A stretch of 64,000 nucleotides of DNA from Magallana gigas (GCF_963853765.1 NC_088859.1:5084001-5148000), one strand, 5' to 3'. Counted from the first letter of the stretch, positions 11,786-60,300 are shown. A program made the numbers and translations. The notes: generated from the sequence alone by a model not told the origin.

Positions 11786-13915
11786 GATATTAATGAAGGT
11801 AATCAATTTATCTCAAAACTTTATTTTTATTAAAATATGTTGGCAATTTTCATTTGATAAATATTATCAATGATGTTTTCGTCAAAGAAAAGTAGTATTT
11901 TACCGTGCGTGATTTGCAGCGCAAGAGTTACTTCCCCATAGTGATTTGGCTGGAAAAAATCTATTTTTAGAAACTACATACCCATACCTATCAATCTAGT
12001 ACATAGAATATGTACCGTACCAGGCATCATTTTTTGGTCAATGGTACATTGGATACCTTAATTGGCATTATAAAACTTGAATTTTTGAGTAGAATCAATA
12101 TATTGAGCATAATTTCTAGAAGAGAGGTGACACAAAATGGCTACCCCAAAACAGAGGAATAAACCTCTTTGAAAGGAGAAAAACGTTATTGTCCACAAAC
12201 TTTCTGGACAGCCGTTGTATATCGTTAACAGAGGTTTTACCTTAAAAAAAAACCCTTTAATTTTACCACTGTATGAAATAATGAATGTGAATAAAAAGGT
12301 AATGTATGATACGCACATTAATGTTGGTTTGAAACAAACTGGTTCTGCTGATACTGGCAAGAGAAGTTTATAATTCAAGAAAGGCAAAATTTTAGTAGGA
12401 TATTAATTTGATGTTGAAAGAATGATTGACAATATTTTTATAGTGTGTTTTGATGTTTGTAGGTCAAGTTGTCTGTGAGCGACACAGTAAAGCCGACAAG
12501 ATGGGGGATTGGGGCGAGAGAATCACGGTGGAGGAGGTCCTTAAACTGGTGCCCCTGCAAGGTAAGGACCAATCACAAACCTCTTTACAACAGAATGATT
12601 TTTTAATGAAGCTGGGTGGTCAACAAACTAACCATCAATTTTCAGAAGTGAGTTGTTTAGGTATAAACTATCAACATAGTAAAGGAAAATTCCAAATATT
12701 TTAGATTTAATTGATAATGTGATCTATTTTTATACAGAGCCCTTCTTATTAGGAGATTATGATAGTCTAAAAATGTACATGACCATCTGTCCCTCTTAAT
12801 GTTATGATGTTATGCAGCATCGGTGGTAATGCTCCACCAGCCATGGTCACTTAGTTAGGATAATTATTGAATGCTTATTAAGTATATTTGGTTAATCAAT
12901 CCTGTAGCAACAACACACACTAAGTTAAAATGATATAACTGTTTTGGTGTCGGAAGCATTCCAAGATATTAGGTACAACCTGCTGATATTAAAAATTAAT
13001 GTAGACATTTCAACCAATAAAAGCTTAACATTTTAAAAACTAAATTTAAATTTTCTATGATATATATCGACATATAATGGATACCATTTGATTTATAATT
13101 TATATGACACATATTCTAAGTGTCCTTGGTCTACCACTGACAGCAAGCGACAGGAGTTCTGTGATAAGGTCGAGGGGTACGGCCGAGTGTGTGACTGTGA
13201 CGACCCCGCCCCACTCACATTCCATCCACCTAAGGTAGGAAATATCATCTAGTCATCAGCAGGTAAAAAAAGATTAATATGGAAAAGTTTAGGAAAATAT
13301 ATCAAGGCCACACCAATTTGTAAAATAATTCTTCAGATTTTCAATATAAATCATTGGGATAGAAAATAATAAGGCAAGCTAAAACTAGTAATATTTAAAT
13401 TTATTTAATATTTGATTTAAGTGCGATTTCAAAAGTATTAAGGCTCAACGAATTGCATAAGAGCGTATCGACTTCTATCACCCCATATCAAAGTCTAAAG
13501 TTATAGAAAAGTTCCAAGAAGAGCTAGATTTGTCAACCTGGGTGTTTGTATCATATGGCATGAAAGTGGGAATCTAGTATTATATTTACCTCTTTATTTA
13601 AACAGTATTTTATTATGCAATATATCAAATAAATGGATGGGATATCAGGCATTGTCTATTTAAATCCACTCCGACCTACAAGGTCAACCTCTGTACCATT
13701 GAAGGCTTATACATGGAAATTGCGTTTGTCTTGATTCATAAACAAAGTTCATTGAGCTACACTTATCACGTATGCTTAGTTTGCTTTTTATTGAGTTTTT
13801 ATGCAGGATACACTTGTGTTTGAGTTGTATAATAAGTATATTTACTAAGTACATGTATTAGGAATTTGCATATGCCGGTATAATAATTCTACTGCTTTTC
13901 TTAGATGTCTACCTG

Positions 13916-14380
13916 TTTTTAGCCGGGCTCTGCTGTAAGCAGAGTCCTGGCTCTAGGCAGGCAAATTGCCAATGTTACTATAAATAGCACAACTTCAAAA
14001 GTAAACAAAAAAACCAAACAGCGTCAAAGTAAAAGCTTCCGCTATACCAAATAGTTACACAAAGAGCCACGCTTTGTCAAAAGTGCTGGCATTTTGTTTT
14101 TGTTTTTTTTTTAAATTCGAGAGAATTGTCTATATTTTTTAGTTTTCTTATTATTAATGTGCTTTAAAAAACAAGACTATGCATTTTGGACACATATAAT
14201 GCGCATGAATTGTTATGAACTACTTTGCTGCGCGTTGAAGAAATGGGGATTGAATATATAACGCTTGTGTCAAAATTCAAGGCAGCAACTGTTGAACTTT
14301 TTTTTACTAGACAGACATATTTTTGTTTATAGCCGCTTACAAAATTTGGTCACTCTCTGACGCTTTGTCGACATTAAAAG
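13916..14380 (+). mobile_element. Probable non-autonomous element beginning TTTTTAGCCGGGCTCTGC-loop-GCAGAGTCCTGGCT; paralog from ~47154; absent upstream of cGLR B
   Basis: 5' hairpin after a T-run, with presence/absence between units. The 3' end is not defined. Confidence 0.45.
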
Positions 14381-14381
14381 C

Positions 14382-14443
<62 letters not shown>

Positions 14444-14995
14444 CAGTTTTTACTACACTAATATGCTTAAAGACACACCAAAAGAGCCCAGCTTTCAGTA
14501 CTTCAGTACTTTGATTTGTTTAAATCTGCATGTAGCATTAAGAAAAAAATGGACCATGTCATTTAAAATTGGATGATATATAACATCCACTTGTATACCT
14601 AATTTCTTCCTACAACCATCCAACCAATCATTGGTTGTTATCAGTGATATCTGTAGGTCTTGTTCTGTCAGGCCAGATTTTTTATTTCACTATTCATTGA
14701 TTTTATATATGGTATCACTTTGACAGTAAACACATTTATGTACCTTAGCATTTAATACACATTCTAAACGGATTTCTTAATTTTAAATATCTGTAGCTCC
14801 CTATTCATTCATCTCTGTCTCTCTCTTTTAAGCAAACTTCTTAATTAGAAATTAATTTAAAACCAGCAATCAAATATGTAAACTTATGAAAGACAATAAA
14901 ACACACAGCTGAAACAAAGTGAAAGTACAATAAAATAAAATTCCTGCAGCTAAAAATAGCATAAAATTTCCACAGGTGTAGAGTTCACCTTTAAA

Positions 14996-16514
14996 ATGGA
15001 GTCTTTCCCAGTTGAAATGTAAGTTCACGCAAATATTCTTATAATTTTCATATAAAATGTAAGCACTACATTATTGGAACATTTTCTATCTGAAGGTATG
15101 AAAAATATGATTTACAAATTGATAATTGCTCAAAACAATACACACATCTAATTCTAACAGATATGAGGGACTCCAGCACCTGTCAGAGTCAGTGTTTGTG
15201 GGACTGTGTGAGATACTGGGGACCTCACAACAGGTGGCCCTCAGGAGGGAGACACAGGACATCATAGATATGATGAAGAGACGATTTTATACTTATGATG
15301 GAGTCATTGAGATGACGAGTGGAAGTATGAGGGAAGGATTCAGACTGGAGGGATCAGATTTGGACGTAATGTACTGGCCAAACAACCACCGAGTGATCAT
15401 GGACATGTCTCAGTCTGAGTATTACAACACAGCCAATACAACCTTGATTCTCTCTGACAGTTCTGAGAGTCCACCAGGATTCACTCTACTTCAGTTACTG
15501 ACAACATCAAGATACAGAGAAGTCCAATCAGCTTGTGTCAGAATGAATGACAGAGTCTATATATCTAGTTCTATATACAGAGAGTTAACTTGTTCAAAAG
15601 CATATCCTAATTCTACTGTACATGGACCCTGTGGTAGTGGTTATATAGCAGGGAGAGAATATGACACTGCTCACTGTTTTGTTTGTGACTTTTGGCCTCC
15701 ATCTGCCTCCTCATGGAAAGACAGATGCCATGCATGGCCTGATTCTGAAATTGTCAATGACATTGTCAGAAATGGATGCCACTTTGTAGCAATAGGACAT
15801 CCATTTGGACCCCATGAAAAGGAAGAATGGAGATTTTCTTTTTCACGAGCAGAGTATAAATGTGTGTCAGCAATGAACCACTGTCAGTTTTTGACATATG
15901 GATTGTTAAAGCTGTTCTTAAAAGAAGTTATAAATCAACAATCAGAAGAAACCAATGAACTGCTGTGTTCCTATCATATGAAGACAACAGTTTTCTGGGC
16001 AATTCAACAAAACACACTACCTCATTGGTGTCCACAAAATCTCTTGGCTTGTCTCTGGGTTTGCTTTAAACTCCTCCTTCAATGGGTGTATGAGGGGATC
16101 TGTCCTAACTTTTTCATCCCCAAAAACAACCTGTTTTTGACAAAGGTCCACAGCTCAGCACAAAACAGATTGTTCCTACAGTTACATGAATTGTACAAGA
16201 AAGGTCTGGCCTGTCTGTTACAGAGTTCATCTATCAGGTCCTACATCATTGATGTCCTGTACAACCCTAGAGCTTTTGTTTGTACAGATGAGAGTTTATT
16301 TATGTCTGAAGTTGACTATGATATAGAACTTTTCAACACAATGCGTACTTCTACTTATGTAGGATCAGGTAAACACCTATATATAAAAGGCATACACACA
16401 ATAGAACATTGGGTAGATTCACGCCTTACACACTGTCAAGTTTTCATGTTACAGAGACTTACAGCCTCTGTTCTTTTAGCACACTGCAGTTATGTTACAC
16501 AACATGTGCACTAA
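14996..16514 (+). CDS. cGAS-like receptor (cGLR / Mab-21 nucleotidyltransferase) paralog A, C-terminally truncated, ~458 aa (exons 14996-15018 + 15161-16514)
   Basis: Motifs SGSMREG...SDLDVM (G[S] + DxD), third acidic residue in EYDTAHCF, GCHFVAIG, EWRFSFSRAE, LLKLFLK, SYHMKT and CPNFFIPKNNLF are characteristic of the cGAS/Mab-21 fold. A +1 frameshift near 16474-16480 ends the frame at 16514. May be a pseudogene. Confidence 0.8.
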
Positions 16515-17182
16515 TACAGGTGTCAACAAACAGATGTAAATTGCAGACAAAATATCCTGTCAAATGCTGAAATTAGCAGCCAAGTTTGGGTGTGTCTCTG
16601 ACATGTTGTACATTGCCATGTATTATAACAAGACACTCAGATACAGGGAAGCTTTATCTATTATAGAGATTACAAAGTTCAAGTTAGCACAGCCATATCT
16701 GCTGTATTGGAGACATGTAGACAGAGAGAGGTATACTGAGGCTGTAGGGGGACAGTCCTGGTCTACAAAGATGAGACAAGCTGTAGCAAGGGATATCCTA
16801 CTTCACAACACAATCTGTTATATAACTAATACCAGAACAACAGTCTGCTCTACAGAATACAGAGCCTACATTATATATCCCAGTGTTTGTAATATTACAC
16901 TTCCTAGAGTTCTTGTGTTACAGACACATTGATACAATATTATCACAAGCAGCTCTAGATGAGCTACAGGTCCTAGTCCACCATGATCAGGGACTGTATG
17001 TACCTGTTCGTTACAGAGACATCTCTTGGGAGATCCTGGGGATCTGTCAACAGATCACAGGGAACCTCCAGGCTGCTTTATACTCATACCAACGGTCACT
17101 CACGCAGTATCCATGGAACAACATACAAGGTGCTACACAGAGGAGAATACAGGATATGATTCAGTCAACACCACACCAGTAA
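16515..17182 (+). pseudogene. Decayed TPR-like C-terminal tail of cGLR paralog A
   Basis: Aligns to residues ~445-670 of the 31102..33114 ORF but has TAA at 16537-16539 (TAT in the other paralogs) and a 5-bp deletion near 16823; split over track ORFs 16564..16932 and 16883..17182. Confidence 0.85.
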
Positions 17183-17680
17183 TGAAATTATAGCCATTAA
17201 CAAAACAAACTTTGTACTAAGACATTCCAAGTCAGTCATCCTATATTCACAATACCTTAGATTTAAGTGTTCAATGAAAATATATTATCTTATATATAAT
17301 TCAATGTTTATTTGTTTTATCTATCTTTATATTGTTGCTTTAAAGCCATTATATACATGTATGTTCTTTGTCAGGAATATGAATATATTATATATATAAA
17401 ATTTATATTTTCATCCACCGAGTATGATTTCCTTTATTTCTTACGGAAACTTATTGTAATTCATAGCTCTGTAGAAACTGACAGGGTTGAAGTCTACACA
17501 CCTGTTTATTGATTGATGGAAACATACAGTGATCTCTTAAGACAAATCACGGACTCTATGAAATAATCCTGATGATGTCAGACTCAAATTCCTGTAAGGG
17601 ATGATTTGGCTGTTTCTTTAAGCTAATGTATGGTACCGATGTACTTTACAGTAATTAAGTTAATTTTACTTACTGTTTAC

Positions 17681-17686
17681 AATAAA
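17681..17686 (+). promoter_or_regulatory. Candidate poly(A) signal AATAAA of cGLR A (conserved at 33596-33601 and 50906-50911)
   Basis: Same position ~480-505 bp after the tail stop codon in all three paralogs. AATAAA is common in AT-rich DNA. Confidence 0.35.
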
Positions 17687-20600
17687 TTTATAAATTTGTT
17701 GAAAGAAAATGTAAATATAAACATATATATATGAAGATAGCGATCATTGCATAAAAAATTTACATGACTCGTAATGTGTGTTATGTATTTTTTTCTGCAA
17801 TGTGGCCACCTTCATATTCCGCATGAATCAGAAAAAAAAACATTTTATTGTTTAAATTAGCACTTCTGCAGGTAAAAATATTGTGCTGGAAACTTTGCGA
17901 GGAAAACTGTTTTTTAGTTCAAGATGAAGTGGAGGGAAGCTTATGCTATACCCCTGGTGACGATGTGGGCTTCCAGACCTGGTTAAAGTTTTTGGATCAG
18001 GTTCTGTATCTAAGTTATTACTTCTCCTTTCTTCACCAAACTTGCATTGATGGTGCATCTTTTAATACTTATGCGCTTGAAAGGCTTGAATGCTAAATCT
18101 AAGTCATAGGTTTGGGACACTGGATGAGGTGGTAAAAGTTTTTGGAGCTGGCGCTTTATGATAGACAAATCTTAGTTATTATTGGTTTGAATAGATGATG
18201 CATTTTGTGATACTGATGATGATCAGGCATAGATGCTGAATCTGATCCATAGGTTTTAGATGCTGAAAAAGTTTATGATTTTTGGAGTAGGCCACAGGTG
18301 TTTTTAAATGCTATATTACACAGGTATGTGTAATGGAAATTGTGCTAATACAATCTTTGGATTTCCTTAGGGTGTGTAATATGAACTTATGCTCTGTCTC
18401 TATCTCTCTGATACCGAGCAATTTGAGAACATGTGCCATCACTTCATCATATGACTCCATTTTTGTTTGTAACCGTTTGAGCAGATTGAGGATGTGATTT
18501 TAATCAGATTGAGATTAGTCACCCATTTTTCACAATTCAGGCATCATAAAGAATAACTATACACACTGTTGCATGCTTTTTCAAGCCCGTGCTTCTGTCA
18601 TTTCCTACCTTGTGTGTTTTCAGGTCTTAAGTGAGTTTGGTATAAAAAGTTGAAAAGTTGAAAAAACTTATCCATAAATATTTCCATATATGCAAAGAAT
18701 ACATTTTTTGGTAATATATTAAATTGTGTTTGAAATAATTGCAGAATTGAACTATATTACGAATTGGTGTGGGCCAAGATACATTTTATCTGTTATATGA
18801 TAGATATTTTTAATGTGTATCAAAGTATCAAGCCATCATACATTCTAAATTTTCTAAAATCTTATAATTTGAGAACAGTTAGAGGTGGACAATCTGAAGA
18901 ATGTGGCAATAACTGTGATAGCCAGCAACCGTCCACAGTACCTATATAGGTGAGTTTACTTACTGTAAATGATGTAGTACTTTGTCTGTCTGTCTGTCTA
19001 TCAAGTTTATGTGATAACTAACATCTGTATGCTGTATCTCAACAGGTAAGATGTAAGTCCCCAGTATCTCTATAGATAAGTAATAAGTCCTCAGTATCTC
19101 TACAGTTGAGTTATAAGTCCACAGTACATGTATCTCTAAAGGTGAGTTATAAGTCCACAGTATCTCTACACATGAGTAACATTAAGTCCCCAGTATCTCT
19201 ATAGGTGAGTTATAAGTCCACAGTATCTCTATAGATGAGTTAAAAGGGCACAGTATCTCAGTAGATGAGTAATAAGTCCACAGTATCTCTATAGGTTAGT
19301 TATAAGTCCAAAAATTAAGCCACCTTTAACTGTCTCACCCTAGTGCCTTGTATACTTGTACTTTAAGGGAATGTTCCTAACCCTGATACCTTTACCTCCT
19401 CCACAGGATTTAATGCTTCTGTAGTCATGGCTGTCCACATATCATTATGTGATATAATGAGCATTAATATTAAATTCTTTTTATATCATATTTGTTCGCT
19501 GTGTGATACTTTGCTGTTATTGTACCTCCCCAGGATGCTGGTCAGGCTGTACGTCAGGAGTCCGACCCGACATGATCACGGTGTTCATCGATGGATTCTT
19601 CCAGGTCTGTACATCCCTTAAAGTTGTTGTTACAATAGACTGCATAACACACACACACTATGTTTACTGACAAGCTTATGGGAATATAATTGTGTGTGTA
19701 ATTTTCCTGTGTCAGGAGCCCCTGGAGGTGACCAGACTGCTCGGGTTGAGGGGGATACAGCACACCCCCCAGGGGAAGAAAAACGCCAGGGTCAGCCAGC
19801 ACTACAAGGCCAGCCTCACTGCCACCTTTGACCTTTACCCAGTAAGTCCTTGACTTACTTTCTCTACTATGGTTTTTAGAAATATGAACATTTATACGGT
19901 AGATACAAATTTTGTATCGAGGAAAAACTATTTTGTCAAACAATATCATATGATCATCAGTGTGTAAAATGGTTTGGGGGTCACAGCTGCAATACGTAAC
20001 TACTCTTTGGATACCCCAGCTTCCTCCCTTTATCGTTGACTCCTTTGTGTCAACATTCATGCCAACAAAAGATAGTTATATGAATTGTTTAACTTGTTTA
20101 TGAATGTTGTAAATATAAGTTTAGTTTAAATACAAATAAATGTAATTTCAAAATTTCTCCCCAGGAGGCTTTGTATACCATTGTCATTGAGGAAGATCTA
20201 GATGTGTCACCAGACTTTTTCAAGTAGGTCAATTATGTCTGCTATGAACTGCAAAGCCAGTTATATTTATTTCAGAGGAACAAAAAAAAGTAAAATTCTG
20301 TCTTTAAATGTTGATGCTATATTCATGTAAATGTCATCAAATATGTACAAATGGAATTCATCCCTCCATAAACTACTAGTGTTCTGCTTGTTTCAGTTAC
20401 TTCAGTCAGACCCTGCACCTGATGGAGAAGGACAGTAGTTTGTACTGCATCTCTGCTTGGAACGACCAGGTGAGTAAATCCGAACACATTCCAACATCAG
20501 TTTATGTTGTATCTTTGCTTGGAATGACCAGTTGAGTAAACTGGATGAAATGATAATTTCACGGTTGTTATTATAATCAAATTTTCTTATTAAAAATTAA

Positions 20601-23140
20601 ATTGTTAATAGTTGATAAAAAATAACTACCCTATTATGTATATTTATAAAGGTCACATCATTGTTGGTAATGTTGACCTTATTTGTTTTGGTTAACAAGA
20701 GATTCCCACTTAAGTAAAGACTGTCAACATAACATTTTTCAACTCAAAAAAGTATCAGCCTCATTCTGTGCTTAAACCCCACTTTACTTCTTTAAAGACA
20801 TGAACCTTTTTTTATGCTCAAGGTCAAATTTTTGTATGCTTAAGGTCAAATTTTTGTTAAGATTTGGCCTGGTTCCTTGTTTCAGGGTTACTCCCACTCA
20901 TGTAAGGACCCACGTAAGCTGTACCGGGTGGAGACCATGCCGGGGCTGGGCTGGCTGCTGAAGAAGAAACTCTTCAAGGACGAACTGGAGAGACAGTGGC
21001 CTTCTTCTGACAAAGTAAGGACAAACTGATTTTTAACGGACAAATTTCTTTCATAAGTTTAAGCCCTAACCCTTATCAAAACTATGCTAAAAATACATTT
21101 TTACTTAAATTTCATTTTCCTTTATTAAATCTAAAATACTGTTTGATATTTCACAATGATATGATGTCAGTCTTGACGTAGTTTTACTTTTACTTCCTTT
21201 TACCTTGTAATTAGTCACCTGATGACTTACCTTTAATTAACACCTGTGTGTTTCTGTGATTGACAGCAGTGGGACTGGGACATGTGGATGCGTCTCCCCA
21301 CGGTCAGGAAGAACCGGGAGTGTATCATTCCGGACGTCTCCCGCACCTATCACTTCGGATCTAAAGGACTCAACATGAATCCGTACTTCCAAGAAGTCTA
21401 CTTTAAAAAACACTCCATTGTTAACGAATCTAACGTCGCTCTGAAGGACCTAGAGAGGTGAAACTGAACTTCTTTCTTTGTAATTGATAAACTCCTCCAT
21501 GAATTGATATATTTGAATTTTCTTATGTAAGACTAAATATTTACATTTTTCAGTGTGTTTGTCTTTGATAACACTAGAAATCAATTTTGTATTGTATAGT
21601 CCAATAAATTCAAATGACGTATTGTCAGGGCGCAAGTGGGGCTCTTATGATTAAAAGAAATGAAAATCACATAAATATGCCAATACTCTAATATTTAATC
21701 ATACAGTTGCTGAAAATTATATACCAATATAAGTACATGTAATAAGGAATCATTCTTTGAATATTATGAGGTGATAATTATCTCCTCATAATACTTAAAG
21801 AATGATTCCTTACTGTAGATTCTAAATTAAACGCGATGAAGTAAAAGGCCTATCCACGTAAAATCGCGAGAGGCATCCTCCGCAGATTTAAAAATCTCTT
21901 CATTATTTTCTGAGAGTTGAAAACTATAAGAAATAAGGAGAAAACTTCCATGTTCATGATTTTATATTCTCGCATTTTGATACAAACCAGCAGGACCGCA
22001 GAATTAAGTACTCGCGTAATATAAGGAATTTACAGTATTCCTTTAGTAAAATCAATACCTTCGTAAGTTTTTATATATAAGTCACCTGTGTTTGTTTTTA
22101 TTTTTGGTCATAAATTTACATCTGTCTTTATAGATTCATAAATTTTCAGTTTTAAAACTAAAAACTTGTTAAAGTAAATGTGTTTTAATGTACATGTATA
22201 TGATATATGATATATTCCGTATTACAAATGTCAGATGAACAAATGCATAAATAACTCATTTTTATAATTATCTTGATGCAAATTGGAATATAAAAATGTA
22301 ATCTGAATATTTTCCAGGATGACAGCTGACAAATACGAGGTGATGATAAATGAGATCCTGAAGTCAGGGGTAGTAGTGGACCACAGCAAGGACCCATGTG
22401 ATAGCGGGCTGGTCCCCGACAACAAGGTACATATGGTGCATTATATATATATCTATAGTACATATATTAGTTCATTTTATATATATATAACTCTAGTACA
22501 TATAGTATATTATGTATATTACTCTAGTACATATAGTATATTATATATATAATTCTAGTACATATAGTACATTATATAACTATAGTACACATAGTACATT
22601 ATATATATATAACTATAGTACATATAGTACATTATATATATAATTCTAGTACATATAGAATATTATATATATAACTCTAGTACATATACATGATCACAGC
22701 AAGGACCCGTGTGATAGAGGGCCTGTCCCTGACAACAAGGTATATACATGAAGTAAACATATACATTACTCTAGTTCCTGTCCATGAGTGCAGTACGTTG
22801 AATTTTGTCTATTGACTATTTTAAGGACTTTTTATAGTTGAATGTTAATTCTGAACTATTTACTTTCTATAATTAAAAGTTCTTATAGTATAAATCAGCA
22901 GGCACTGAGGCTGTGATGCTTAGATAACAGTCATACAATTAGACAGTCAGTATGTGATGCTCATCAACAACCTCTATATCCCACCAAAATAAATGCCGGT
23001 GGACAGTTCTTCTGTTTTAGTTTTCTAAAGACTGTTACTCATTTTAAAACATATTTATATTTTGTCTAGGATGCTGTACATGTCATGTACATACAGATGC
23101 AACATCCCACAGATTTTACCACCTGGAAACAACTCGCCAA

Positions 23141-23201
<61 letters not shown>

Positions 23202-23794: not shown

Positions 23795-23850
<56 letters not shown>

Positions 23851-36835: not shown

Positions 36836-36874
<39 letters not shown>

Positions 36875-41015: not shown

Positions 41016-41060
<45 letters not shown>

Positions 41061-50401: not shown

Positions 50402-51780
50402 TAAAATTTTAGCCATTAACAAAACAAACTTTGTACATAGACATTTTCAAGTCAGTCATCCTATATTATTCACAATACTTTAGATTTAAGCGTTCAATGA
50501 AAATATATTATTTTATATATAATTCAATGTTTATTTGTATTATATATCTTTATATTGTTGCTTTAAAGCCATTATATACATGTATTTTTTTGTCAGGAAT
50601 ATGAATATATATATACTGTATATAAGATTTATATTTTCATCCACCGAGTATGATTCTCTTTATTTCTTACGGAAACTTATTGTAATTCATAGCTCTGTAG
50701 AAACTGACACGACTGAAATCTACACACCTGTTTATTGATTGATGGAAAGATACAGTGACTTAAGATAAATCAGGGACTGTATGAAATAATCGTGATGATG
50801 TCAGACTTAAATTCCTGTAGGAGATGATTTGGCTGTTTCTTTAAGCTACCGGTAATGTACTGATGTACATTAACAGTAATTAAGTTAATTTTACTTACCT
50901 TTTACAATAAATTTAGAAATTTGTTGAAAGAATATATATATGAAGATAGCAATCATTGCATAAATTTTTTTTCATAATGTGGATTATGTATTTTTTCTGC
51001 AATGTTGCCACCTTCATATCCCGCATGGATCACAAAAGAAAGCATTTTATTGTATAAATTAGCACTTCTGCAAGTAAAAATATAGTTTCAGATGCTGGAT
51101 GAGGTTAAGGTTTTTGGAGCTGGTAAAAGTTTTTGGAGCTGGCGCCTTTGAATAGATGATGCATCTTGTGATAGTGAGACACTCCATAAGTTTAAATGCT
51201 GAATCTGAGCCATAGGTTTTAGATGCTGAAGGAGTTTAAGTTTTTTGGAGTAGGCCACTTGTTTTTTTAAATGATATTACTAGGACACATGTTTTGGAAA
51301 TCATGCTAATACAATCTTCGGATTTCCTTAGGGTGTGTAATATCAACTTATGCTCTACCTCTATCTCTCTGACACGAGCAATTCGAGAACATGTGCCGTC
51401 ACTTCTTCCTATGACTCCACTTTTTTTGGTAACCGATATTACTATTTCTTTCACTTGCTCTGATTAGCTAAGATAACTCATGAATATTCTTAAATTAAAG
51501 TTCACCAGGAGGGAACCTCAAGCAGTATTTCTTCAGATCCTTGTTTTGTGACAGTAGAAAAACAAGGAACAGATTGAGGATCTGATTTTAATCAGATTGA
51601 TGTTGGTAACCCATTTTTCACAATTCAGGCATTATAAAGAATAACTATACACACTGTTACACACTTTTTCAAGCCAGCGCTTCTGTCATTTCCTACCTTG
51701 TGTGTTGTCAGGTCTTAAGTAAGTTTGGTATAAAAAGTTGAAAAAACTTATATGCAAAGAACACATTTTTTGGTAATATA

Positions 51781-52098
51781 TAAGGAATAAGGAATCATGT
51801 TTTGAGTATTATGATGTGATAATTTTGGTCGGGGCGTGATCAAATCCAATAAAGCCCAAAGGGCTTTATTATAGATTTGATCACGCCCCGACCGAAATTA
51901 TCACCTCATAATATTCAAAGAATGATTCCTTATTTCTTATATTTATATAATTTTAGGCCATTGTACGATTAAATCTTTAAATATAAATATGCAAACCCCG
52001 CCGGCGCCTCAATTTGGCGTCATTTGTATTATGGGTTATATAGTACAAAATCGATACGTAGTGTTATCACAGACAAAGACACCGGATAATGTAAATAT
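51781..52098. mobile_element. ~320-bp insertion with a 145-bp near-perfect hairpin (51788-51932), unit 4 only
   Basis: TAAGGAATCAT...GGTCGGGGCGTGATCAAATC-AATAAAGCCC-AAA-GGGCTTTATT-GATTTGATCACGCCCCGACC...ATGATTCCTTA; empty site TGGTAATATATAAAATTGTG at ~423-442. Confidence 0.75.
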
Positions 52099-52360
52099 AT
52101 CAAATTGTGTTTGAAATAAATTGCAGAGTCCAACGAACTATATTACGAATTGGTGGGGTCCAAGATACATTCTATCTGTTATATGATAGATATTTTTAAT
52201 GTGTATCAAGTATCAAGCCAGCAAACATTCTAAATTTTCTCAAATCTTTTAATTTGAGAACAGTTAGAGGTGGACAATCTGAAGAATGTGGCAATAACTG
52301 TGATAGCCAGCAACCGTTCGCAGTACCTATTTAGGTGAGTTACTGTAAATGATGCAGTAT

Positions 52361-52402
<42 letters not shown>

Positions 52403-52591
52403 CATCCATCCATCCATCCATCTGTCTGTCTTATGTGATAACCAACAACCATCTGCAGTATCTCAATAGGTAAGATATATCCCCAGTATCTCTATAGGTG
52501 AGTTATAAGTCCATGAACAATATTTCTTCAGGTGAGTTAAAAGTCTATAGTATCTCTATGGATGAGATAAAAGTCTACAGTATCTCATTAA

Positions 52592-53033
52592 GGTAAGGTT
52601 TGCGGTTACAGGGAGATAACTCACACATTTTCATTGTGACGTAACACCAACTACCCTTTATTTTAGTTATGACGTCAAAACTTATATGACGTCATAATTG
52701 ATTTCATTTTTGTTGCATTTTATTCTATTTTTAGATAGTTCATCAGAAATTAATAAAAGTGAATCATAATATTAATAGTGATATTATTTTCGAACATTTT
52801 AAGCATAAATAACCCCCATAATAGTCACACATAAAATGTACATATTTTCACGAAATTGTTTACATTTCATCAAAATGAAAATTGGAAATCATGAAATTTG
52901 ACCTTTTGTAGTTATAAAACGGGACGAGAAAAATTCATTTGAATTTCATGAGAAAAAAGACTTTAGTATAGTGAACAAAATGGTATGTAACTTTGGTACA
53001 ACCTCTAAAAAATGCAAGCCGCAAACCTTACCT
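52592..53033. mobile_element. MITE with TTAA target duplication and GGTAAGGTTTGCGG TIRs (Kolobok-like), unit 4 only
   Basis: TTAA|GGTAAGGTTTGCGG ... CCGCAAACCTTACC|TTAA, a perfect 14-bp TIR, inserted in the 30-bp minisatellite. Confidence 0.85.
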
Positions 53034-54274
53034 TAAGTCCCCAGTATCTCTATTGGTGAATTATAAGTCCTAAATTTAAACCACCTTTAACTCTCTCACC
53101 CTAGTACATTGAATACTTGTACTTTAAGGGAGTGTTCCTAACCCTGATACCTTTACCTACTCCACAGGATCTGCTTCTGTAGTCATGGCTGTCCACCTAT
53201 CATTATGTTTCTTTTCATTGACCATTGAAGTGATATAATGAGCATTGATATTATCTTCTTTTTATATCATATCTATTTGTTTGCTGTGTGATACCCTGCT
53301 GTTATTTTACATCCCCAGGATGCTGGTCAGACTGTTAGGTACGTCAGGAGTCCGAGCCGACATGATCACGGTGTTCATCGATGGATTCTTCCAGGTCTGT
53401 ACATCCCTAAAAATTGTTGTTACAATAGACTGCATAACACACACAGTTAACACTATGTTTACTGACAAGCTTATGGGAATATAATTGTGTGTGTAATTTT
53501 CCTGTGTCAGGAGCCCCTGGAGGTGACCAGACTGCTCGGATTGAGGGGAATACAGCACACATCCCAGGGGAAGAAGAACGCCAGAGTCAGCCAGCACTAC
53601 AAGGCCAGCCTTACTGCCACCTTTGACCTTCACCCAGTAAGTCCTTGACTTTCTATTTTCTACTTTATACCATGGTTTTTAGAAATATGTACATTTATGC
53701 TGTAGATACAACTTTTGTATCAAGGAGAAACTCTTTTTTCAAACAATCCTATATGATCATCAGTGATTGTGTGTAAAATGGTTTAGGGGTCACAGCCACA
53801 ATACATAGGTACTCTTTGGATACCCCGGCTTCCTCCCTTATTGTTGACTCCTTTGTGTCAACATTCATGCTTACAAAGGATAGTTATATAAATTGTTTAA
53901 GTTTGTTTATCAATGTTGCAAAAATAAGTTTAGTTTAAATGGAAATACATGTCATTTCAAATTTCTCTCCAGGAGGCTTTGTATACCGTTGTCATTGAGG
54001 AAGATCTAGATGTGTCACCAGACTTTTTCAAGTAGGTCAATTATGTCTGCTATGAACTGTAAAGCCAGTTATATTTATTTCAGAGGAACAAAGAAAAGTA
54101 AAACTCTGTCTTTTAATGTTGATGCTATATTCATGTAAATGTCATCAAATATGTACAAATGTAATTCATTCCTCCGTAAACTACCAGTGTTCTGCTTGTT
54201 TCAGTTACTTCAGTCAGACCCTGCACCTGATGGAGAAGGACAGCAGTTTGTACTGTATCTCTGCTTGGAACGAC

Positions 54275-54850
54275 CAGGTAAATAAAACTGAACACATTCC
54301 AACATCAGTTTATGCTGTGTGACCAAGTGAGTAAACTGAACACATCCCAACATCAGTTGATGGTGTTTGAGCAGGTAAGTAAACCGAACACATTCCAACA
54401 TCAGTTGATGGTGTTTGAGCAGGTAAGTAAACCGAACACATTCCAACATCAGTTTATGGTGGTTGAGCAGGTAAGTAAACCGAACACATTCCAACATCAG
54501 TTTATGGTGGTTGAGCAGGTAAGTAAAACTGAACACATTCCAACATCAGTTTATGGTGGTTGAGCAGGTAAGTAAAACTGAACACATTCCAACATCAGTT
54601 TATGGTGGTTGAGCAGGTAAGTAAAACTGAACACATTCCAACATCAGTTTATGGTGGTTGAGCAGGTAAGTAAAACTGAACACATTCCAACATCAGTTTA
54701 TGGTGGTTGAGCAGGTGAGTAAGACCGAAAACATTCCAACATCAGTCTATGGTGGTTGAGCAGGTAAATAAACTGAATGCATCCCAACATCAGTCTATGC
54801 TGTGTGACCAGGTAAGTACACTGAACGCATTCCAACATCAGTTTATGGTG
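54275..54850 (+). repeat. 48-49-bp intronic minisatellite, ~12 units (single unit only in copy 2 at ~20467-20510)
   Basis: Same unit as 2247-3010. Confidence 0.95.
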
Positions 54851-57344
54851 TATCTTTGCTTGGAATGAACAGTTGAGTAAACTGGATGAAATGATAATTT
54901 CACGGTTGTTATTAGAATCAAATTTTCTTATTAAAAATTTAATTGATAATAGTTGATAAAAAATAACTATCCTATTATGTATATTTATAAAGGTCACATC
55001 ATTGTTGGTAATGTTGACCTATTTGTTTTGGTTAACAAGAGATTCCCACTTAAGTAAAGACTGTCAACATAACATTTTTCACCTCAAAAAAGTATCAGCC
55101 TCATTCTGTGCTTCAACCCCAATTTACTTCTTTAAAGACATGAACCTTTTTATATGCTCAAGGTCAAATTTTTGTATCCTTAAGGTCAAATTTTTGTTAA
55201 GATTTGGCATGGTTCCTTGTTTTAGGGTTACTCCCACTCATGTAAGGACCCACGTAAGCTGTACCGGGTGGAGACCATGCCGGGGCTGGGCTGGCTGCTG
55301 AAGAAGAAACTCTTTAAGGACGAACTGGAGAAACAGTGGCCTTCTTCTGACAAAGTAAGGACAAACTGATTTTTAACAGACAAATTATCTTTCATAAGTT
55401 TAAGCCCTAACCCTTATCAAAACTATGCTAAAAACTTATTTTTACTTAAATTTCATTTTCCTTTATTAAATCTAAAATACTGTTTGATATTTCACAATGA
55501 TATGATGTCAGTCTTGACGTAGTTTTACTTCCGTTTACCTTGTAATTAGTCATGTGATGACTTACCTTTAATTAACACCTGTGTGTTTCTGTGATTGACA
55601 GCAGTGGGACTGGGACATGTGGATGCGTCTCCCCACGGTCAGGAAGAACCGGGAGTGTATCATTCCGGACATCTCCCGCACCTATCACTTTGGATCTAAA
55701 GGACTCAACATGAATCCGTACTTCCAGGAAGTCTACTTAAAAAAAACACTCCATTGTTAACGAATCTAACGTCGCTCTGAAGGACCTAGACAAGTGAAAC
55801 TGAACTTCTTCCTTTGTAATGTAAACTCCTCCATGAATTGATATAGACTTAATATTTACATTTTTCAGTGTGTTTGTCTTATATACCAATATAAGTACAT
55901 ATAATAAGGAATCATTCTTTGAATATTATGAGGTGATAATTATCTCCTCATAATACTTAAAGAATGATTCCTTACTGTAGATTCTAAATTAAACGCGAGG
56001 AAATAATAGGCATATCCACGTAAAATCGCAAGAAGCATCCTTCGCAGATTTAAAAATCTCGCCATTATTTTCTGAGAGTTGAAAACTATAAGAAATAAGG
56101 AGAAAAATACAACGTTCGCGATTTCATATTCTCGCATTTTGATACAAACCAGCAGGATCGCAGACTTAAGTACTCGCGTATTATAAGGAATTTACAGTAT
56201 TCCTTTAGTAAAACCAATACCTTTGTAAGTTTTGATATATAAGTCACCTGTGTTTAATTTTATTTTTGGTCATAAATTTACATCTGTCTTTATAGATTCA
56301 TAAATTTTCAATTTTAAAACTAAAAACATTTATGTGTTTTAATGTACATGTATATGTTATATTCCGTATTACAAATGACAGATGAACAAATGCATAAATA
56401 ACTCATTTGTATAATAATCTTGATGCAAATTTGAATATAAAAATGTAATCTGAATATTTTCCAGGATGACAGCTGACAAATACGAGGTGATGATAAATGA
56501 GATCCTGAAGTCAGGGGTAGTAGTGGACCACAGCAAGGACCCGTGTGATAGCGGGCTGGTCCCCGACAACAAGGTACATATGGTACATTATATATCTATA
56601 TATACAGTACATATAGTACATTATATGTATAACTATAGTACATATAGTACATTATATATATAACTATAATATAATAGTACATTATATATATATACAGTAC
56701 ATATAGTACATTATATATATAACTATAGTACATATAGTACATTATATATATGATTCTAGTACATATAGTACATTATATATATAACTATAGTACATATAGT
56801 TCATTATATATATAACCATAGTACATATAGTACATTATATATATAACTATAGTACATATAGTACATTATATATATATAACTATAGTACATATACATGATC
56901 ACAGCAAGGATCCGTGTGATAGCGGGCTTGTTCCTGACAACAAGGTATATACATGAAGTAAACATATACATTACTCTAGTACCTGTCCATGAGTGCAGTA
57001 CGTTGTATTTTGTCTATTGTTTATTTTAAGGACTTTTTATAGTTGAATGTTAATTCTGAACTATTTACTTTCTAAAATTAAAAGTTCTTATAGTATAAAT
57101 CAGCAGGCACTGAGGCTGTGATGCTTAGATAACAGTCATAAAAGAGACAGTAGTCTGTGATGCTCATCAACAACCTCTATATACCACCAAAATAAATGCC
57201 GGTGGACAGTTCTTCTGTTTTAGTTTTCTAAAGACTTGTTACTCATTTTAAAACAGATTTATATTTTGTCTAGGATACTGTACATGTCATGTACATACAG
57301 ATGCCACATCCCACAGATTTAACCACCTGGAAAGAACTCGCCAA

Positions 57345-57383
<39 letters not shown>

Positions 57384-60300
57384 TGGAATTTTTATTATAC
57401 ATGGTTGCCTGATATTCATGAATTTATAGGGCACCTGCCTGTGAATTTTAATCATTAACAAATTATAAGACCTGATCATTGTATCCATTATTAAAAAATG
57501 GAAATCCACAAATTTGTTTAATTTATTTTTAAGCATTAATTCAAAATATTATAGATTTAGATATACCGGTAGATTGAATAAAGAATGAGTACTATAACNN
57601 NNNNNNNNNNNNNNNNNNNNNNNNNNNNNNNNNNNNNNNNNNNNNNNNNNNNNNNNNNNNNNNNNNNNNNNNNNNNNNNNNNNNNNNNNNNNNNNNNNNN
57701 NNNNNNNNNNNNNNNNNNNNNNNNNNNAGAATTCTCTAACAGTGTTATCCTGTGTGATCACTCATTTAAACTACAGGAATTTCCTGTTTCTGTGTTTTAG
57801 TGCTACCATTTGTGGGATCTAGATGTGCGAGGATTTCACAAGGTATGACTTCTTACTATAAGTAGATGCAGATGAAGTTATTTATTGTATTATATATTAC
57901 TTTTATGACTTTTGAAGCAACAATCAATCCATATAAAAATGAGAATATAAGTTTTGTGTTTGCTGATTTCAGAGTGTGTGGAGACTCTACCTGAATGGAA
58001 CACCTGTACTACTAGTGGGGGTACCTACTTCCCCCTACCAGTAAGTCTCTCTCTCTCATCACCCTTGATCTTATAAGGTTTTAAGCAGTTTAAATATGGT
58101 TCTTGTTATTCAGTCATGTCTTTTTATCTAACTCTGCAGATTTATTTCGTTGTTTCCTTAAATAAATGAAAATATTTTCTTTCCATCAATTATTAAGCAA
58201 AGGCAAAGGTCAATTTTTATCTAGTCTTTGACATACATTTGTTTATTTATTTACACAGCTCGCATAAACCAGACAGTGTGAAGCCATTTGTACAGAAGGA
58301 ACGATCAAAGAAAGCCAAGGCCCAGTAGTGGGATGACCCCTGACCCCAGTAAAGGGCTGTCCCCTGCCTGCAATACATCCCCAGGGTAGATCTGGCTCTG
58401 ACTACTTGTAAACTTAGGAATTTGACTCAGCTTTTCCTCCTCTTGGACCAGGGTCTAGACACAATTTACAATAAACAGGGTAACAGGAGGGAATTCTGTA
58501 AGGAACTGTTGTGTGCAATATTATCATCTTGTTGGATTTAACACATCTTTTTTGTTATGATAAACCAATGTCTGTTTTAAGTACACTGGTGTGTATTGTT
58601 AGCTTCAAGATATGGATTACTCTTGAGTTTTTGATAAGTACATGTTATTATTATTTTTGATACATGTACAACGAAGCTGTACCGTAGCAGAAATAGTCTC
58701 CTTCTGATTGTCCTATATCCCTGGGTGATTTACATGTAAAAGACAAAAGTTGTACAGAATGTATATTTTCCTGTACAACTGCAATGAAAAACTAATTCCA
58801 GGAATAAGGTCCAAGTAATAGATTTAGAAGCTGCACATAGCGTTTGATGGTGCAAAGTTTTCTCTTTATTCTGTTTGGTTTTTTTTTCATCTAATCAATG
58901 AAGAATATTTTTAATGCCAATGTTTTTCCTAATGACCAACCATAAATATATCTTGTTCCGATTAGAGTCAATGTTCACCGCCTACCAGTTGTAGGGATAC
59001 TTGTTATCTTAACATCTCCTAACGAACCTAGCATTTACAGTAACCTGCTTTTTCATTGTGTGGTATGTTTACCCTGCTCAAAGTTTGATTGGTGATATCT
59101 AGTGATAAAAACAGGCCTTTAAGCTTTCAGCTGATATTCTAGTAATACATGTACACTCAAAAAATGCATCACATTATTATAAATTGTTTACTTAAAACTG
59201 CATTATTCTAGTACTGAATGAACAAAAAACCGTTATGTGTTCAATGAACATCATATCAATGATTTCTTATGAGAGATTATTGTAATGTATATGAATGTAC
59301 ATTTATATATCAAATGCCAAATTCCAAAAAACAAAGGACATTTAAATGATCTTAAGATATGCCATATTCTTTTCAGATGATTTATATTCGCTGACGGACA
59401 TTTAAACATTCCTTGATGTTGTTTTAAGCGTTTGTGATATGTTTTTAGTAGACGACTTTCACATCAACAAAATATGTCTGCTAGGGTCAATCTAAGGTCA
59501 ATGTGTGAAGGTCACTTATCCTTTTACAACATTAACATCTCTCCAGAACTATGTCTATTGTATTCTCATTATGTTTCTTGTGTTGTAAACTGTTGTTCCA
59601 TACAATCAATAAGATAAGATTTGAACAAAACTGTTGAAACATTTGTTGAAATATTGATATGGTTTATTAAGTTTACCAAGTTAACATTGCACAAACATAT
59701 AGGTTTCAATTTTTTATGCCAAAAAATATTATTGCAACTAAGTGTATATTGAGGACTGATTAGTATTGAAGTAGTTTGCAAAAAGGGCAAAAATAACCCG
59801 TCTAAAGTATTTCAAAAAGGTAATGAAAGTTAAATATAGGTGATTAAAGAAAATGCTGATAATTAAAATTTCTCTAATTTTGTTAATTAAGTAAGATGCT
59901 TTACATGAATTTTAATTAACTATCCTCTTTTGTTAGAGTTCTGGGCATATCAATTTCAGTACACTCATCATTGCTCGGCATGCGCACTGCTTTTACGTCT
60001 TTTACACCTGTTTGTTTGTGCTTCATTTGAACTGCTATTGAGACAGGTTGTGATTTAATATTTCTATGCAATTTTTTTATGGCTATTATTTTTTTAATGA
60101 AGTTGATTTACAAGTAAATATACTTTCACTGTTGTATATGTCTTTGGCTTTTTTATTTAAAGATTTACATGTACTTATATTTTTGATCAGTTTTTCTCTT
60201 TTAAAAAAATGGTGTACTTCAGAAACTGTGCTATGAACACTGATGATAATTTATTTTAATCTGACTCAAAATTGTCTTTTTTCATCTACTGATATTGTAA

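What the first reader, a model, noticed from the sequence alone, without database searches (positions are those of the whole stretch)
12463..58328. Innate-immune cGLR gene nested in a POMGNT1 intron and amplified as a tandem array with decaying host-gene passengers
Seen: in all three complete units a Mab-21/cGAS-fold gene sits on the same strand in the intron between the ...TFHPPK exon and the LEVDNLK exon (where retained) of a POMGNT1 fragment. The whole 13-21 kb block is repeated head to tail. Every POMGNT1 fragment is broken, yet all three cGLRs retain an open catalytic domain. Known: cGLRs are cyclic-dinucleotide-producing pattern-recognition enzymes that are strongly expanded in bivalves, and POMGNT1 is normally a single-copy glycosyltransferase. 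Inference: selection acts on cGLR copy number or diversity, and the housekeeping gene is a hitch-hiker. I am not aware of this host/nested arrangement having been described.
Basis: partly seen in the sequence, partly recalled or inferred. Interest (0 to 1): 0.85.

Follow-up and report, generated by a model that had tools for sequence, protein, structure and literature searches.

The report
Nested cGLR/POMGNT1 tandem array in oyster
In the Pacific oyster a cGAS-like immune gene sits inside an intron of the glycosyltransferase gene POMGNT1, and that gene plus the rear two-thirds of POMGNT1 has been copied head to tail about eight times; this is a real but fairly ordinary tandem duplication of an already hugely expanded gene family.

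Summary
The window is Magallana gigas chromosome contig C7:5,084,001-5,148,000. It holds the right half of a ~124 kb array of about 8 units, running from window -61,250 to +62,543.

Each unit carries POMGNT1 exons 7-20, with a two-exon MB21D2-like Mab-21/cGLR gene on the same strand in intron 8. Exons 1-6 exist once, upstream of the array. Joined to the first unit they give a complete 616-codon POMGNT1 with canonical splice sites, so an intact host gene exists outside the window.

All four POMGNT1 modules in the window are disabled: three by frameshifts and one by loss of exons 9-15. Of the three Mab-21 genes in the window only copy B is intact (4 of 7 array-wide). Copies A and C keep an open catalytic core but are broken in the C-terminal TPR-like half.

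The nested arrangement and the array also occur in C. angulata. In C. virginica and Saccostrea intron 8 is under 200 bp and empty.

Substitution patterns do not separate a "selected cGLR" from a "decaying passenger": dN/dS is 0.4-0.65 for Mab-21 and 0.13-0.3 for POMGNT1 exons. Only the density of disabling lesions favours Mab-21.

Best reading: a lineage-specific insertion followed by birth-and-death tandem duplication.

The parts
1..62543 (+). Window part of the tandem array. The whole array runs from about window -61250 to +62543, i.e. C7:5,022,750-5,146,543, with about 8 units.
   Evidence: Self-BLAST of the window and of 264 kb around it. Unique sequence orthologous to the C. angulata flank begins at 62573.
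595..6553 (+). POMGNT1 module c4_A (exons 9-20). Disabled by a 10-nt deletion in exon 11. No exons 1-6.
   Evidence: tblastn with the 616-aa POMGNT1 P0390; exon-by-exon alignment.
12462..13234 (+). Exons 7 (12462-12560) and 8 (13112-13234) of unit A. Both open.
14996..17182 (+). Mab-21/cGLR copy A (M5_A), a pseudogene. Start exon MESFPVE at 14996, large exon from about 15159. +1 nt at 16471 and -5 nt after 16823. 99.1% identical to the intact copy M1 upstream of the window.
18876..24110 (+). POMGNT1 module c5_B (exons 9-20). A 5-nt deletion in exon 10, otherwise open. RefSeq annotates a 323-aa 'POMGNT1-like' protein from it (P0460).
27620..28392 (+). Exons 7 (27620-27718) and 8 (28270-28392) of unit B. 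Both open.
30917..33114 (+). Mab-21/cGLR copy B (M6_B), intact. Start exon 30917-30939 with a GTAAGT donor; large exon about 31081-33114. Carries GS, DVD and the third Asp. C-terminal TPR-like domain.
33966..33985 (+). Deletion junction in unit C. The Mab-21 3' flank joins directly to intron 15, so exons 9-15 are absent. The junction lies in read sequence, not at a gap.
   Evidence: (family D8).
35802..37500 (+). POMGNT1 module c6_C, exons 16-20 only. The end of exon 16 runs into the gap at 35909. RefSeq annotates a 111-aa model here (P0457).
35909..36267 (.). Assembly gap (two N runs separated by 9 letters) at the end of exon 16 and start of intron 16 of unit C.
43570..44360 (+). Exons 7 (43570-43668, identical in protein to the transcript-derived P0390) and 8 (44238-44360, with an in-frame stop) of unit C.
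48213..50401 (+). Mab-21/cGLR copy C (M7_C). A single AAA>TAA at 49601 splits it into a 420-aa catalytic part and a 265-aa TPR-like part.
52261..58328 (+). POMGNT1 module c7_D (exons 9-20). A +1 nt frameshift in exon 15 and many amino-acid changes. Private N:S is 11:3, close to the neutral expectation.
57599..57727 (.). Assembly gap in intron 17 of module c7_D.

Best explanation
Insertion. In the lineage leading to Magallana gigas and M. angulata, after its split from C. virginica and Saccostrea, a DNA segment carrying a complete two-exon MB21D2-like Mab-21 gene landed in intron 8 of POMGNT1. The gene encodes a cGLR nucleotidyltransferase core plus a C-terminal TPR-like domain. It lies on the same strand as the host. 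The insertion enlarged intron 8 from under 200 bp to about 5.6 kb.

Amplification. A tandem segmental duplication followed. Its left breakpoint is in POMGNT1 intron 6 and its right breakpoint is about 5 kb downstream of the gene. Unequal crossing-over and gene conversion then expanded and reshuffled the unit into about 8 head-to-tail copies.

Consequences for the two genes. The unit contains the whole Mab-21 gene with its own start exon, so every duplication makes a potentially working cGLR. It contains only exons 7-20 of POMGNT1, so every extra POMGNT1 module lacks a promoter and an N-terminus. Only the first module, spliced to the single-copy exons 1-6, makes POMGNT1.

Current state. The array evolves by birth and death. 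Four of 7 Mab-21 copies are intact, 3 were recently disabled, and all 6 extra POMGNT1 modules are disabled.

Shown versus inferred. Shown: the anatomy, the comparative absence and presence, and the state of each copy. Inferred: the order of events, the recombination mechanism, and that intact copies act as cyclic-nucleotide-producing sensors.
For: Array extent and mosaic identity of units.

Exon map: exons 1-6 occur once upstream, and exons 7-20 plus Mab-21 occur in each unit.

Head copy: assembles into a 616-codon ORF with 19 canonical introns, 97.4% identical to a transcript-derived protein.

Lesions per copy.

Shared secondary deletions: exons 7-8 are missing in units 2 and 4, and exons 9-15 are missing in unit C. 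This shows units copied from already altered units.

Other species:
- C. angulata's independent assembly has the Mab-21 gene called inside a 616-aa ILEI+GNT-I gene.
- It has a last unit about 100 kb further on, followed by CABIT.
- It has the same right boundary.
- C. virginica and Saccostrea echinata have a 10-13 kb single POMGNT1 with a tiny intron 8 and no Mab-21 in it.

Single origin: array Mab-21 copies form one clade (SH-aLRT 98) within the family.

Paralogues elsewhere match only the gene body and often sit in other tandem clusters.

Family membership: Pfam, PDB and motif evidence.
Against: - No breakpoint signature (target-site duplication, transposon ends) was found or sought for the original insertion.
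- The disabled POMGNT1 modules show too few nonsynonymous changes and too few exon indels for sequences that were dead from birth. The simple model does not predict this.
- The first unit's exons 7-8 carry 8 amino-acid differences that none of 10 public full-length POMGNT1 proteins share. The head copy is therefore not proven to be the expressed allele.
- Transcription evidence for the window's Mab-21 copies is weak.
- Two gaps lie inside the array.
Confidence: 0.8

Rival explanations
1. Amplification is driven by positive selection for more or more diverse cGLR sensors, and the POMGNT1 modules are pure hitch-hikers that decay neutrally.
For: - Disabling lesions are 4.6-fold rarer per kb in Mab-21 than in the extra POMGNT1 modules (0.28 against 1.29 per kb, p=0.013).
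- The catalytic GS, DxD and third Asp are invariant or nearly so in 32 family members.
- Mab-21 private changes are short of nonsynonymous ones against the neutral expectation (175:99, p=4e-9).
- cGLR radiation in oysters is published (PMC9980059).
Against: - Three of 7 copies are broken.
- dN/dS is higher for Mab-21 (0.4-0.65) than for POMGNT1 exons (0.13-0.3).
- N:S on private branches does not differ between the two genes (p=0.36), nor between intact and broken Mab-21 copies (p=0.9).
- No test here addresses copy-number selection. Tandem arrays expand neutrally by unequal crossing-over.
Confidence: 0.3
2. The internal POMGNT1 modules are, or were until very recently, used. They could serve as alternative 3' cassettes of the single promoter-bearing gene. 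They could cycle through the head position by unequal crossing-over between divergent haplotypes. They could also act through Mab-21-to-POMGNT1 read-through transcripts.
For: - Pairs of disabled modules have dN/dS of 0.13-0.3.
- Private N:S in non-first modules is 46:33 against the 78% nonsynonymous expected (p=4e-5). Exon indels number 7 against 18.7 expected from the intron rate (p=0.002).
- The 3' module of the C. angulata head gene is orthologous (intron divergence 0.025) to gigas module c3, which in the gigas reference is internal and frameshifted.
- Each of c3, c4_A, c5_B and c7_D has just one frameshift.
- RefSeq and UniProt carry protein models from internal modules, and a 1034-aa Mab-21+GNT-I model in C. 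angulata.
Against: - Every internal module in this assembly is now frameshifted or truncated.
- The C. angulata fusion model needs a non-canonical junction after a one-codon read-through and a garbled exon 10, so it looks like a prediction artefact.
- No splice joint linking units was seen in the reads laid.
- Capture of different functional alleles at each unequal exchange could give the same synonymous-biased differences without any current use.
Confidence: 0.15
3. Assembly artefact: one unit, or two haplotypes, wrongly expanded into an array.
For: Two N gaps lie inside the array. Tandem repeats are hard to assemble.
Against: - Units differ by 4-15% and by unit-specific deletions and lesions, far beyond allelic copies.
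- An independent C. angulata assembly has first and last units about 100 kb apart with the same outer boundary.
- Contigs of a public DNA run cover unit-B-specific non-coding sequence without a mismatch. That run could be the assembly's own source.
Confidence: 0.03

Closest known systems
Bivalve cGLR radiation (Li et al. 2023, PMC9980059)
   Same: The proteins are Mab-21/cGAS-fold with the nucleotidyltransferase signature. That paper reports a high number of cGLRs in C. gigas and more than 200 in C. virginica. Two oyster cGLRs were shown to respond to dsDNA.
   Different: That work is a protein catalogue with biochemistry. It does not describe loci, nesting in host introns or co-amplified host-gene modules. 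No member of this ~680-aa TPR-tailed subfamily was identified here as one of their tested enzymes.
Human MB21D2 (C3orf59), PDB 7LT1
   Same: One of the two best PDB matches, with cGLR1 8GJY (E 1e-11 for the single sequence, 6e-12 for the family profile). UniProt names several family members 'C3orf59-like'. It is an orphan cGLR with a complete active site and no known ligand.
   Different: The match covers only residues ~170-335. The oyster proteins add a ~300-aa C-terminal TPR-like helical repeat domain. They exist in hundreds of copies rather than one.
Tandem-duplication-driven expansion of bivalve immune gene families (e.g. C1qDC, PMC6835236; IAPs, PMC7831173)
   Same: Lineage-specific head-to-tail duplication with birth-and-death and many pseudogenes. 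Other Mab-21 clusters in this genome are also tandem, for example three copies 20.6 kb apart on C6.
   Different: Here the duplicated unit is defined by breakpoints inside a housekeeping gene. Each new immune gene therefore drags along a promoter-less 14-exon module of that gene.
Same-strand nested (intronic) genes in animal genomes
   Same: A complete gene with its own start exon and stop lies inside an intron of a host gene. This part of the comparison rests on general knowledge.
   Different: The nested pair is then amplified as a unit, so later copies are nested in a dead host.
POMGNT1 (ILEI stem + GT13/GNT-I catalytic domain)
   Same: The head copy encodes both domains and all 20 exons. 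It is 97.4% identical to transcript-derived oyster POMGNT1. C. virginica and Saccostrea have single compact orthologues.
   Different: The window's copies lack exons 1-6 (membrane anchor and most of the stem) and are frameshifted.

Membership tests
cGLR / Mab-21 (cGAS-like receptor) family | Mab-21 nucleotidyltransferase domain and Mab-21 C-terminal (HhH/H2TH-like) domain | tested here: met
   PF03281 scores 33-38.5 bits and PF20266 scores 43.7-55.3 bits; both cut-offs are 24.1. This holds for all three window copies. PDB matches are to cGLR1 8GJY, MB21D2 7LT1 and many cGAS entries.
cGLR / Mab-21 (cGAS-like receptor) family | Active-site signature h[QT]GS-X8-20-[DE]h[DE]h-X50-90-h[DE]h, as used by Li et al. 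(PMC9980059) | tested here: inconclusive
   Copy B reads LSGS-x10-DVDV...VEYDT. G, S, D and D are invariant and the third Asp is at least 90% conserved in 32 relatives. The third Asp aligns with that of cGLR1 and MB21D2. Two small departures from the literal pattern: Ser in place of Q/T before GS, and a spacer of about 95-98 rather than 90 or fewer.
cGLR / Mab-21 (cGAS-like receptor) family | cGAS-like bilobed fold with the catalytic residues in place | tested here: inconclusive
   The AlphaFold2 model had pLDDT below 50 over residues 1-386 because the alignment was shallow. Only the C-terminal 378-676 was usable; it is TPR-like, with Z up to 13, which is generic for helical repeats.
cGLR / Mab-21 (cGAS-like receptor) family | Ligand-activated synthesis of a cyclic di- or oligonucleotide that signals through STING | not testable with these tools
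   Needs recombinant enzyme assays.
POMGNT1 (functional gene) | Complete ORF with N-terminal anchor, ILEI stem domain and GT13 (GNT-I) catalytic domain | tested here: not met
   Not met for the window's copies. Exons 1-6 are absent and each module has a frameshift, a stop or a large deletion. Met only for the head copy at window -65092..-47356, outside the window.
Tandem segmental-duplication array | Head-to-tail units with common end points, diverged from one another, flanked by unique sequence | tested here: met
   Left edge in POMGNT1 intron 6 at about -61.6 to -61.25 kb; right edge at 62543.
Tandem segmental-duplication array | Presence in independent assemblies or samples, i.e. not an assembly artefact | tested here: met
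   C. angulata GCA_025612915.2 holds first and last units about 100 kb apart with the same right boundary. Contigs of public DNA runs hold unit-B-specific sequence.
Nested gene | A complete gene lying within one intron of a host gene that is itself intact | tested here: met
   Intact Mab-21 copy M1 (-58603..-56413) lies in the 5,648-bp intron 8 of the intact head POMGNT1. The NCBI annotation of C. angulata calls the same arrangement. Within the window the hosts are dead modules.

The most novel reading that the evidence does not exclude
The array works as a recombination-driven cassette system. Unequal crossing-over between divergent haplotypes keeps changing which exon 7-20 module, and which nested cGLR, sits behind the single POMGNT1 promoter. 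Internal modules therefore spend part of their history as the working gene. This would explain why frameshifted modules still show dN/dS of 0.13-0.3, too few exon indels, and a C. angulata head module that is orthologous to an internal gigas pseudogene. Host gene and nested immune gene would then evolve as one polymorphic unit. An unchecked note of a similar cGLR cassette in fukutin, another dystroglycan-glycosylation gene on the same chromosome, would make the pairing non-random if true.
Probability: 0.15. Interest if true: 0.6.

Novelty: new member of a known kind. Interest (0 to 1): 0.35.

Why it matters
It gives a concrete, datable locus showing how the very large oyster cGLR repertoire grows. 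One insertion into a housekeeping intron was followed by about eight rounds of local duplication within the Magallana lineage, with roughly half of the copies already lost.

It warns annotators about this region. RefSeq and UniProt carry partial, chimeric and fused 'POMGNT1-like' and Mab-21+GNT-I models that derive from dead modules.

The one unexpected point is that the promoter-less POMGNT1 modules bear marks of past purifying selection. That makes the locus a useful test case for allele capture and module swapping in tandem arrays of a hyper-polymorphic species.

It is not a new kind of system. Nested genes, tandem immune-gene arrays and the bivalve cGLR radiation are each already known.

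Tried and rejected
- AlphaFold2 on copy B with 32 close relatives gave a poor model (mean pLDDT 48.8, N-terminal half below 50). The catalytic geometry could not be checked. Only the TPR-like tail was searched.
- The Pfam GNT-I search of the genome found exon matches only inside this array. It is a lower bound and cannot by itself exclude another POMGNT1.
- My first POMGNT1 reference search with an insect protein returned no bivalves in the top 120. A second search with P0121 gave the oyster orthologues.
- The Ostrea edulis POMGNT1 (P0394) is not on record for locus retrieval.
- The Mab-21-POMGNT1 fusion reading was considered because of C. angulata model P0456. I rejected it as general. All gigas copies end in a stop, or in one extra Leu and then a stop, and the model's junction is non-canonical.
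A LicD-domain search found hits only on another contig.
- The RNA reads laid on unit B were mostly paralogue-like partial matches. The expected exon 1 to exon 2 splice of copy B was not seen at a sampling of about 1 read in 100. That leaves transcription untested, neither shown nor ruled out.
- No complex prediction was run, since no binding claim is made.


Full report
**Source and coordinates**

The window is G000:C7:5,084,001-5,148,000 (+) of a 564-Mb assembly. Its proteins match Magallana (Crassostrea) gigas records on a 53,672,946-bp contig. GC content is 33.7%, and there are three N runs at 35909-36081, 36091-36267 and 57599-57727. Negative coordinates below are window coordinates upstream of the window. 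I read 100 kb on each side.

**Check of the observation**

Self-comparison gives head-to-tail repeats at 87-97% identity with offsets of 13.4-20.8 kb.
- The peptide TFHPPK occurs three times on the + strand, at 13217, 28375 and 44343.
- LEVDNLK occurs three times, at 598, 18879 and 52264.
- Large + strand frames at 15126-16511, 31057-33111 and 48341-49600 hit Pfam Mab-21 and Mab-21_C above the curated cut-offs.

So the described order holds in all three units: exon, then Mab-21 gene, then exon, all on one strand.

**Gaps**

The left flank of the first gap ends where the other units are 4 nt short of the end of exon 16. Its right flank resumes 158-299 bp further on in the other units' frame. 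The gap therefore hides the last few bases and the donor of exon 16 of unit C, plus the start of intron 16.

The second gap stands for 53-65 bp of intron 17.

The flanks of both gaps are collinear and co-oriented with every other unit. No Mab-21 sequence is affected. A unit lost at a gap cannot be excluded from the sequence alone.

**Extent of the array**

One unit used as a query against 264 kb shows the array running from about -61,250 to +62,543. That is about 124 kb and about 8 units.

The Pfam GNT-I search of the whole genome found exon matches only in this array.

Identity between units is mosaic. Unit 1 matches 12360-19280 at 95.9% over 7 kb. Unit A 1013-5035 matches unit D at about 97%. 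Other parts are 84-92%. This is the pattern expected from unequal crossing-over and gene conversion.

**POMGNT1 exon map**

I used a 62-aa exon to pull full-length POMGNT1 proteins from the representative library. I then obtained oyster orthologues, including the 616-aa P0390, whose cluster has 78 members, mostly from transcript-sized Logan contigs.

tblastn of P0390 defines 20 coding exons.
- Exons 1-6 occur once, at -65092 to -61772.
- Each unit carries exons 7-20.
- The Mab-21 gene lies between exon 8 (…TFHPPK) and exon 9 (LEVDNLK…).

The left edge of the array lies in intron 6. The right edge lies about 5 kb past the stop codon.

Exons 1-8 of unit 1 plus exons 9-20 of the next module assemble into a 616-codon ORF with 19 GT-AG introns. 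It is 600/616 identical to P0390. Intron 8 is 5,648 bp and holds the intact Mab-21 copy M1. An intact host gene with a truly nested gene therefore exists, but outside the window.

**State of the extra POMGNT1 modules**

| Module | Window position | Lesion |
|---|---|---|
| c2 | upstream of window | loss of exon 17, a stop in exon 19, several indels |
| c3 | upstream of window | 7-nt deletion in exon 16 |
| c4_A | 595-6553 | 10-nt deletion in exon 11 |
| c5_B | 18876-24107 | 5-nt deletion in exon 10 |
| c6_C | 35802-37497 | only exons 16-20; deletion junction at 33966/33985 lies in read sequence |
| c7_D | 52261-58325 | +1 nt in exon 15 |

Units 2 and 4 share a 1.25-kb deletion of exons 7-8. 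Exon 8 of unit C has a stop.

**The Mab-21 gene**

Annotated relatives begin MESFPVEI. Each array copy has that start exon about 140 bp upstream of the large exon, with a conserved GTAAGT donor. There are seven copies.

| Copy | State |
|---|---|
| M1 | intact |
| M2 | intact; equals XP_011424308.3 |
| M3 | intact; equals P0002 |
| M4 | -1 nt |
| M5_A | +1 nt at 16471, -5 nt after 16823 |
| M6_B | intact |
| M7_C | AAA>TAA at 49601 |

M5_A is 99.1% identical to the intact M1, so its lesions are recent.

**Family membership**

The family has more than 1000 database relatives of about 680 aa. Hundreds come from C. gigas and C. angulata, and some are named 'C3orf59-like' (MB21D2) or cGAS.

Copy B reads …LSGS-x10-DVDV…VEYDT…. 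G, S and the two Asp are invariant, and the third Asp is at least 90% conserved, in 32 relatives. HMMER aligns the third Asp with that of cGLR1 (8GJY) and MB21D2 (7LT1).

Against the literal signature of Li et al. there are two small departures. Ser replaces Q/T before GS, and the spacer is slightly longer.

The structure model failed for the catalytic half. The C-terminal 300 residues look like TPR-type helical repeats (faint TPR hits).

**Comparative evidence**

In C. angulata (GCA_025612915.2) the 681-aa Mab-21 gene P0004 is called inside a gene whose 616-aa product has ILEI and GNT-I domains.
- The first 3.3 kb of that locus is orthologous (97%) to the unique gigas sequence upstream of the array.
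- Its 3' exons are orthologous (97%, intron divergence 0.025) to gigas module c3, not c1.
- A further unit lies about 100 kb downstream, followed by CABIT. Its unique flank matches gigas from 62573 onward.

In C. virginica the gene spans 10.2 kb, between TRIC and CABIT. Exons 8 and 9 are about 110 bp apart, and there is no Mab-21 match in 30 kb.

In Saccostrea echinata the gene spans 12.7 kb and intron 8 is under 200 bp. A 672-aa Mab-21 gene (50% identity) lies 7 kb downstream of POMGNT1, not inside it.

The nesting is thus specific to the gigas/angulata lineage and older than their split. Divergence between units (0.05-0.15) is several times the gigas-angulata divergence (0.025).

In a family tree the array copies and their database twins form one clade (SH-aLRT 98), which points to one insertion followed by local amplification. 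Paralogues elsewhere match only the gene body at 82-87%. They often sit in other tandem clusters.

**Selection**

Pairwise Nei-Gojobori dN/dS is as follows.
- Mab-21: 0.34-0.68 overall. The N-terminal half gives 0.27-0.65 and the TPR-like half gives 0.27-0.85.
- POMGNT1 exons 9-20: 0.11-0.44, including pairs of frameshifted modules. dS is similar to intron divergence.

Private changes, as N:S counts:

| Set | N:S |
|---|---|
| Mab-21, all copies | 175:99 |
| Non-first POMGNT1 modules | 46:33 |
| c7_D alone | 11:3 (neutral-like) |
| c1 | 2:3 |

Both genes fall significantly below the neutral share of about 78% nonsynonymous. They do not differ from each other (p=0.36). Intact and broken Mab-21 copies do not differ either (p=0.9).

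Private exon indels in the non-first POMGNT1 modules number 7, against 18.7 expected from their introns (p=0.002).

Disabling lesions are 0.28 per kb in Mab-21 and 1.29 per kb in the modules (p=0.013).

Only lesion density leans that way.

The constraint seen in modules that lack a promoter is unexplained. My preferred guess, which is inference, has two parts. Unequal exchanges between homologues captured different functional alleles, and modules change position in the array. The c3/C. angulata orthology fits this.

Site counts ignore transition bias, which would lower the neutral expectation to roughly 72-75%. The tests would remain significant.

**Reads**

Twenty public runs from ten studies hold parts of 27500-33400.
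- Contigs of a DNA-type run cover all 30 bins, including unit-B-specific non-coding sequence, without mismatch.
- Contigs of an RNA library cover only the Mab-21 large exon, several without any difference. No depth falls on the neighbouring non-coding DNA. This suggests, but does not prove, transcription of a B-like copy.
- PolyA raw reads, sampled at about 1 in 100, lie on the exon at low depth. Most are 95-99% alike and only partly fitting, so they come mostly from paralogues or other alleles.
- The exon 1 to exon 2 splice was not seen.

**What is known, and novelty**

Li et al. (PMC9980059) report many cGLRs in C. gigas and more than 200 in C. virginica, and list MB21D2 as an orphan cGLR. 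Tandem duplication as the engine of bivalve immune-gene expansion is well documented for other families. No held paper contains both 'POMGNT1' and 'Crassostrea'.

The locus is therefore a new, nicely resolved example of known processes. It has one odd feature, the constraint marks on dead host modules, and some misleading public gene models (P0121, P0395, P0456, P0457, P0460).

**Verdict**

The locus is real, of moderate interest, and not a new kind of system.

Noticed in passing
window 2351-3091 and 54330-54923: A 49-bp tandem repeat (10 and 7 or more copies) in POMGNT1 intron 13 of units A and D. It gives long spurious open frames on both strands.
   Followed up: no
window 6236-6314, 23795-23858, 61829-61886 and other units: A long dinucleotide (CT/TC) microsatellite directly after exon 19 in every unit. 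It translates as SLSLSL….
   Followed up: no
window 34426-35589: An internal ~432-bp direct repeat (84% identity) in the rearranged stretch of unit C, between the exon 9-15 deletion junction and exon 16.
   Followed up: no
window -61146..-60371 (outside the window; C7:5,022,855-5,023,630): Exons 7-8 of the head unit carry 5+3 amino-acid differences, several of them G>A changes. None of 10 public full-length oyster POMGNT1 proteins has them, whereas internal units' exons 7-8 match those proteins with 0-1 differences.
   Followed up: partly
window 18876-24110 and 35802-37500: RefSeq annotates proteins from dead modules: XP_065923605.1 (323 aa) and XP_065923608.1 (111 aa). UniProt K1Q2P5 (450 aa) reads through two units and duplicates an exon block.
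   Followed up: yes
L033:10001-20060 (C. angulata CM046785.1:54,210,129-54,220,188): A 1034-aa model fusing Mab-21 to POMGNT1 exons 9-20. The Mab-21 stop is displaced by one Leu codon, the junction is non-canonical and exon 10 is garbled. It is probably a prediction artefact.
   Followed up: partly
G000:C6:1883483-1926700 and clusters on C2 (59.2-60.8 Mb), C4 (1.52-1.64 Mb) and C7 (4.3-5.5 Mb): Other members of the same Mab-21 subfamily lie in tandem clusters. On C6 three copies with identical scores sit exactly 20.6 kb apart. The first look found 7567 candidate matches genome-wide.
   Followed up: no
L032:29690-31777 (Saccostrea echinata): A 672-aa Mab-21 gene lies 7 kb downstream of POMGNT1 on the same strand, with 50% identity to the array copies. 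It is unclear whether this neighbourhood relates to the later intronic insertion.
   Followed up: partly
window 62573-64000: Unique sequence orthologous (94.5%) to the C. angulata flank leading into a CABIT-domain gene. By that alignment the gene should start near window 64150, just past the window's end.
   Followed up: partly
C7 about 0.97 Mb (4.1 Mb before the window): An earlier scan note (s1-366423) reports a cGLR amplified with the 3' end of fukutin, another dystroglycan-glycosylation gene. I could not fetch the DNA. A LicD-domain search found no hit there.
   Followed up: partly
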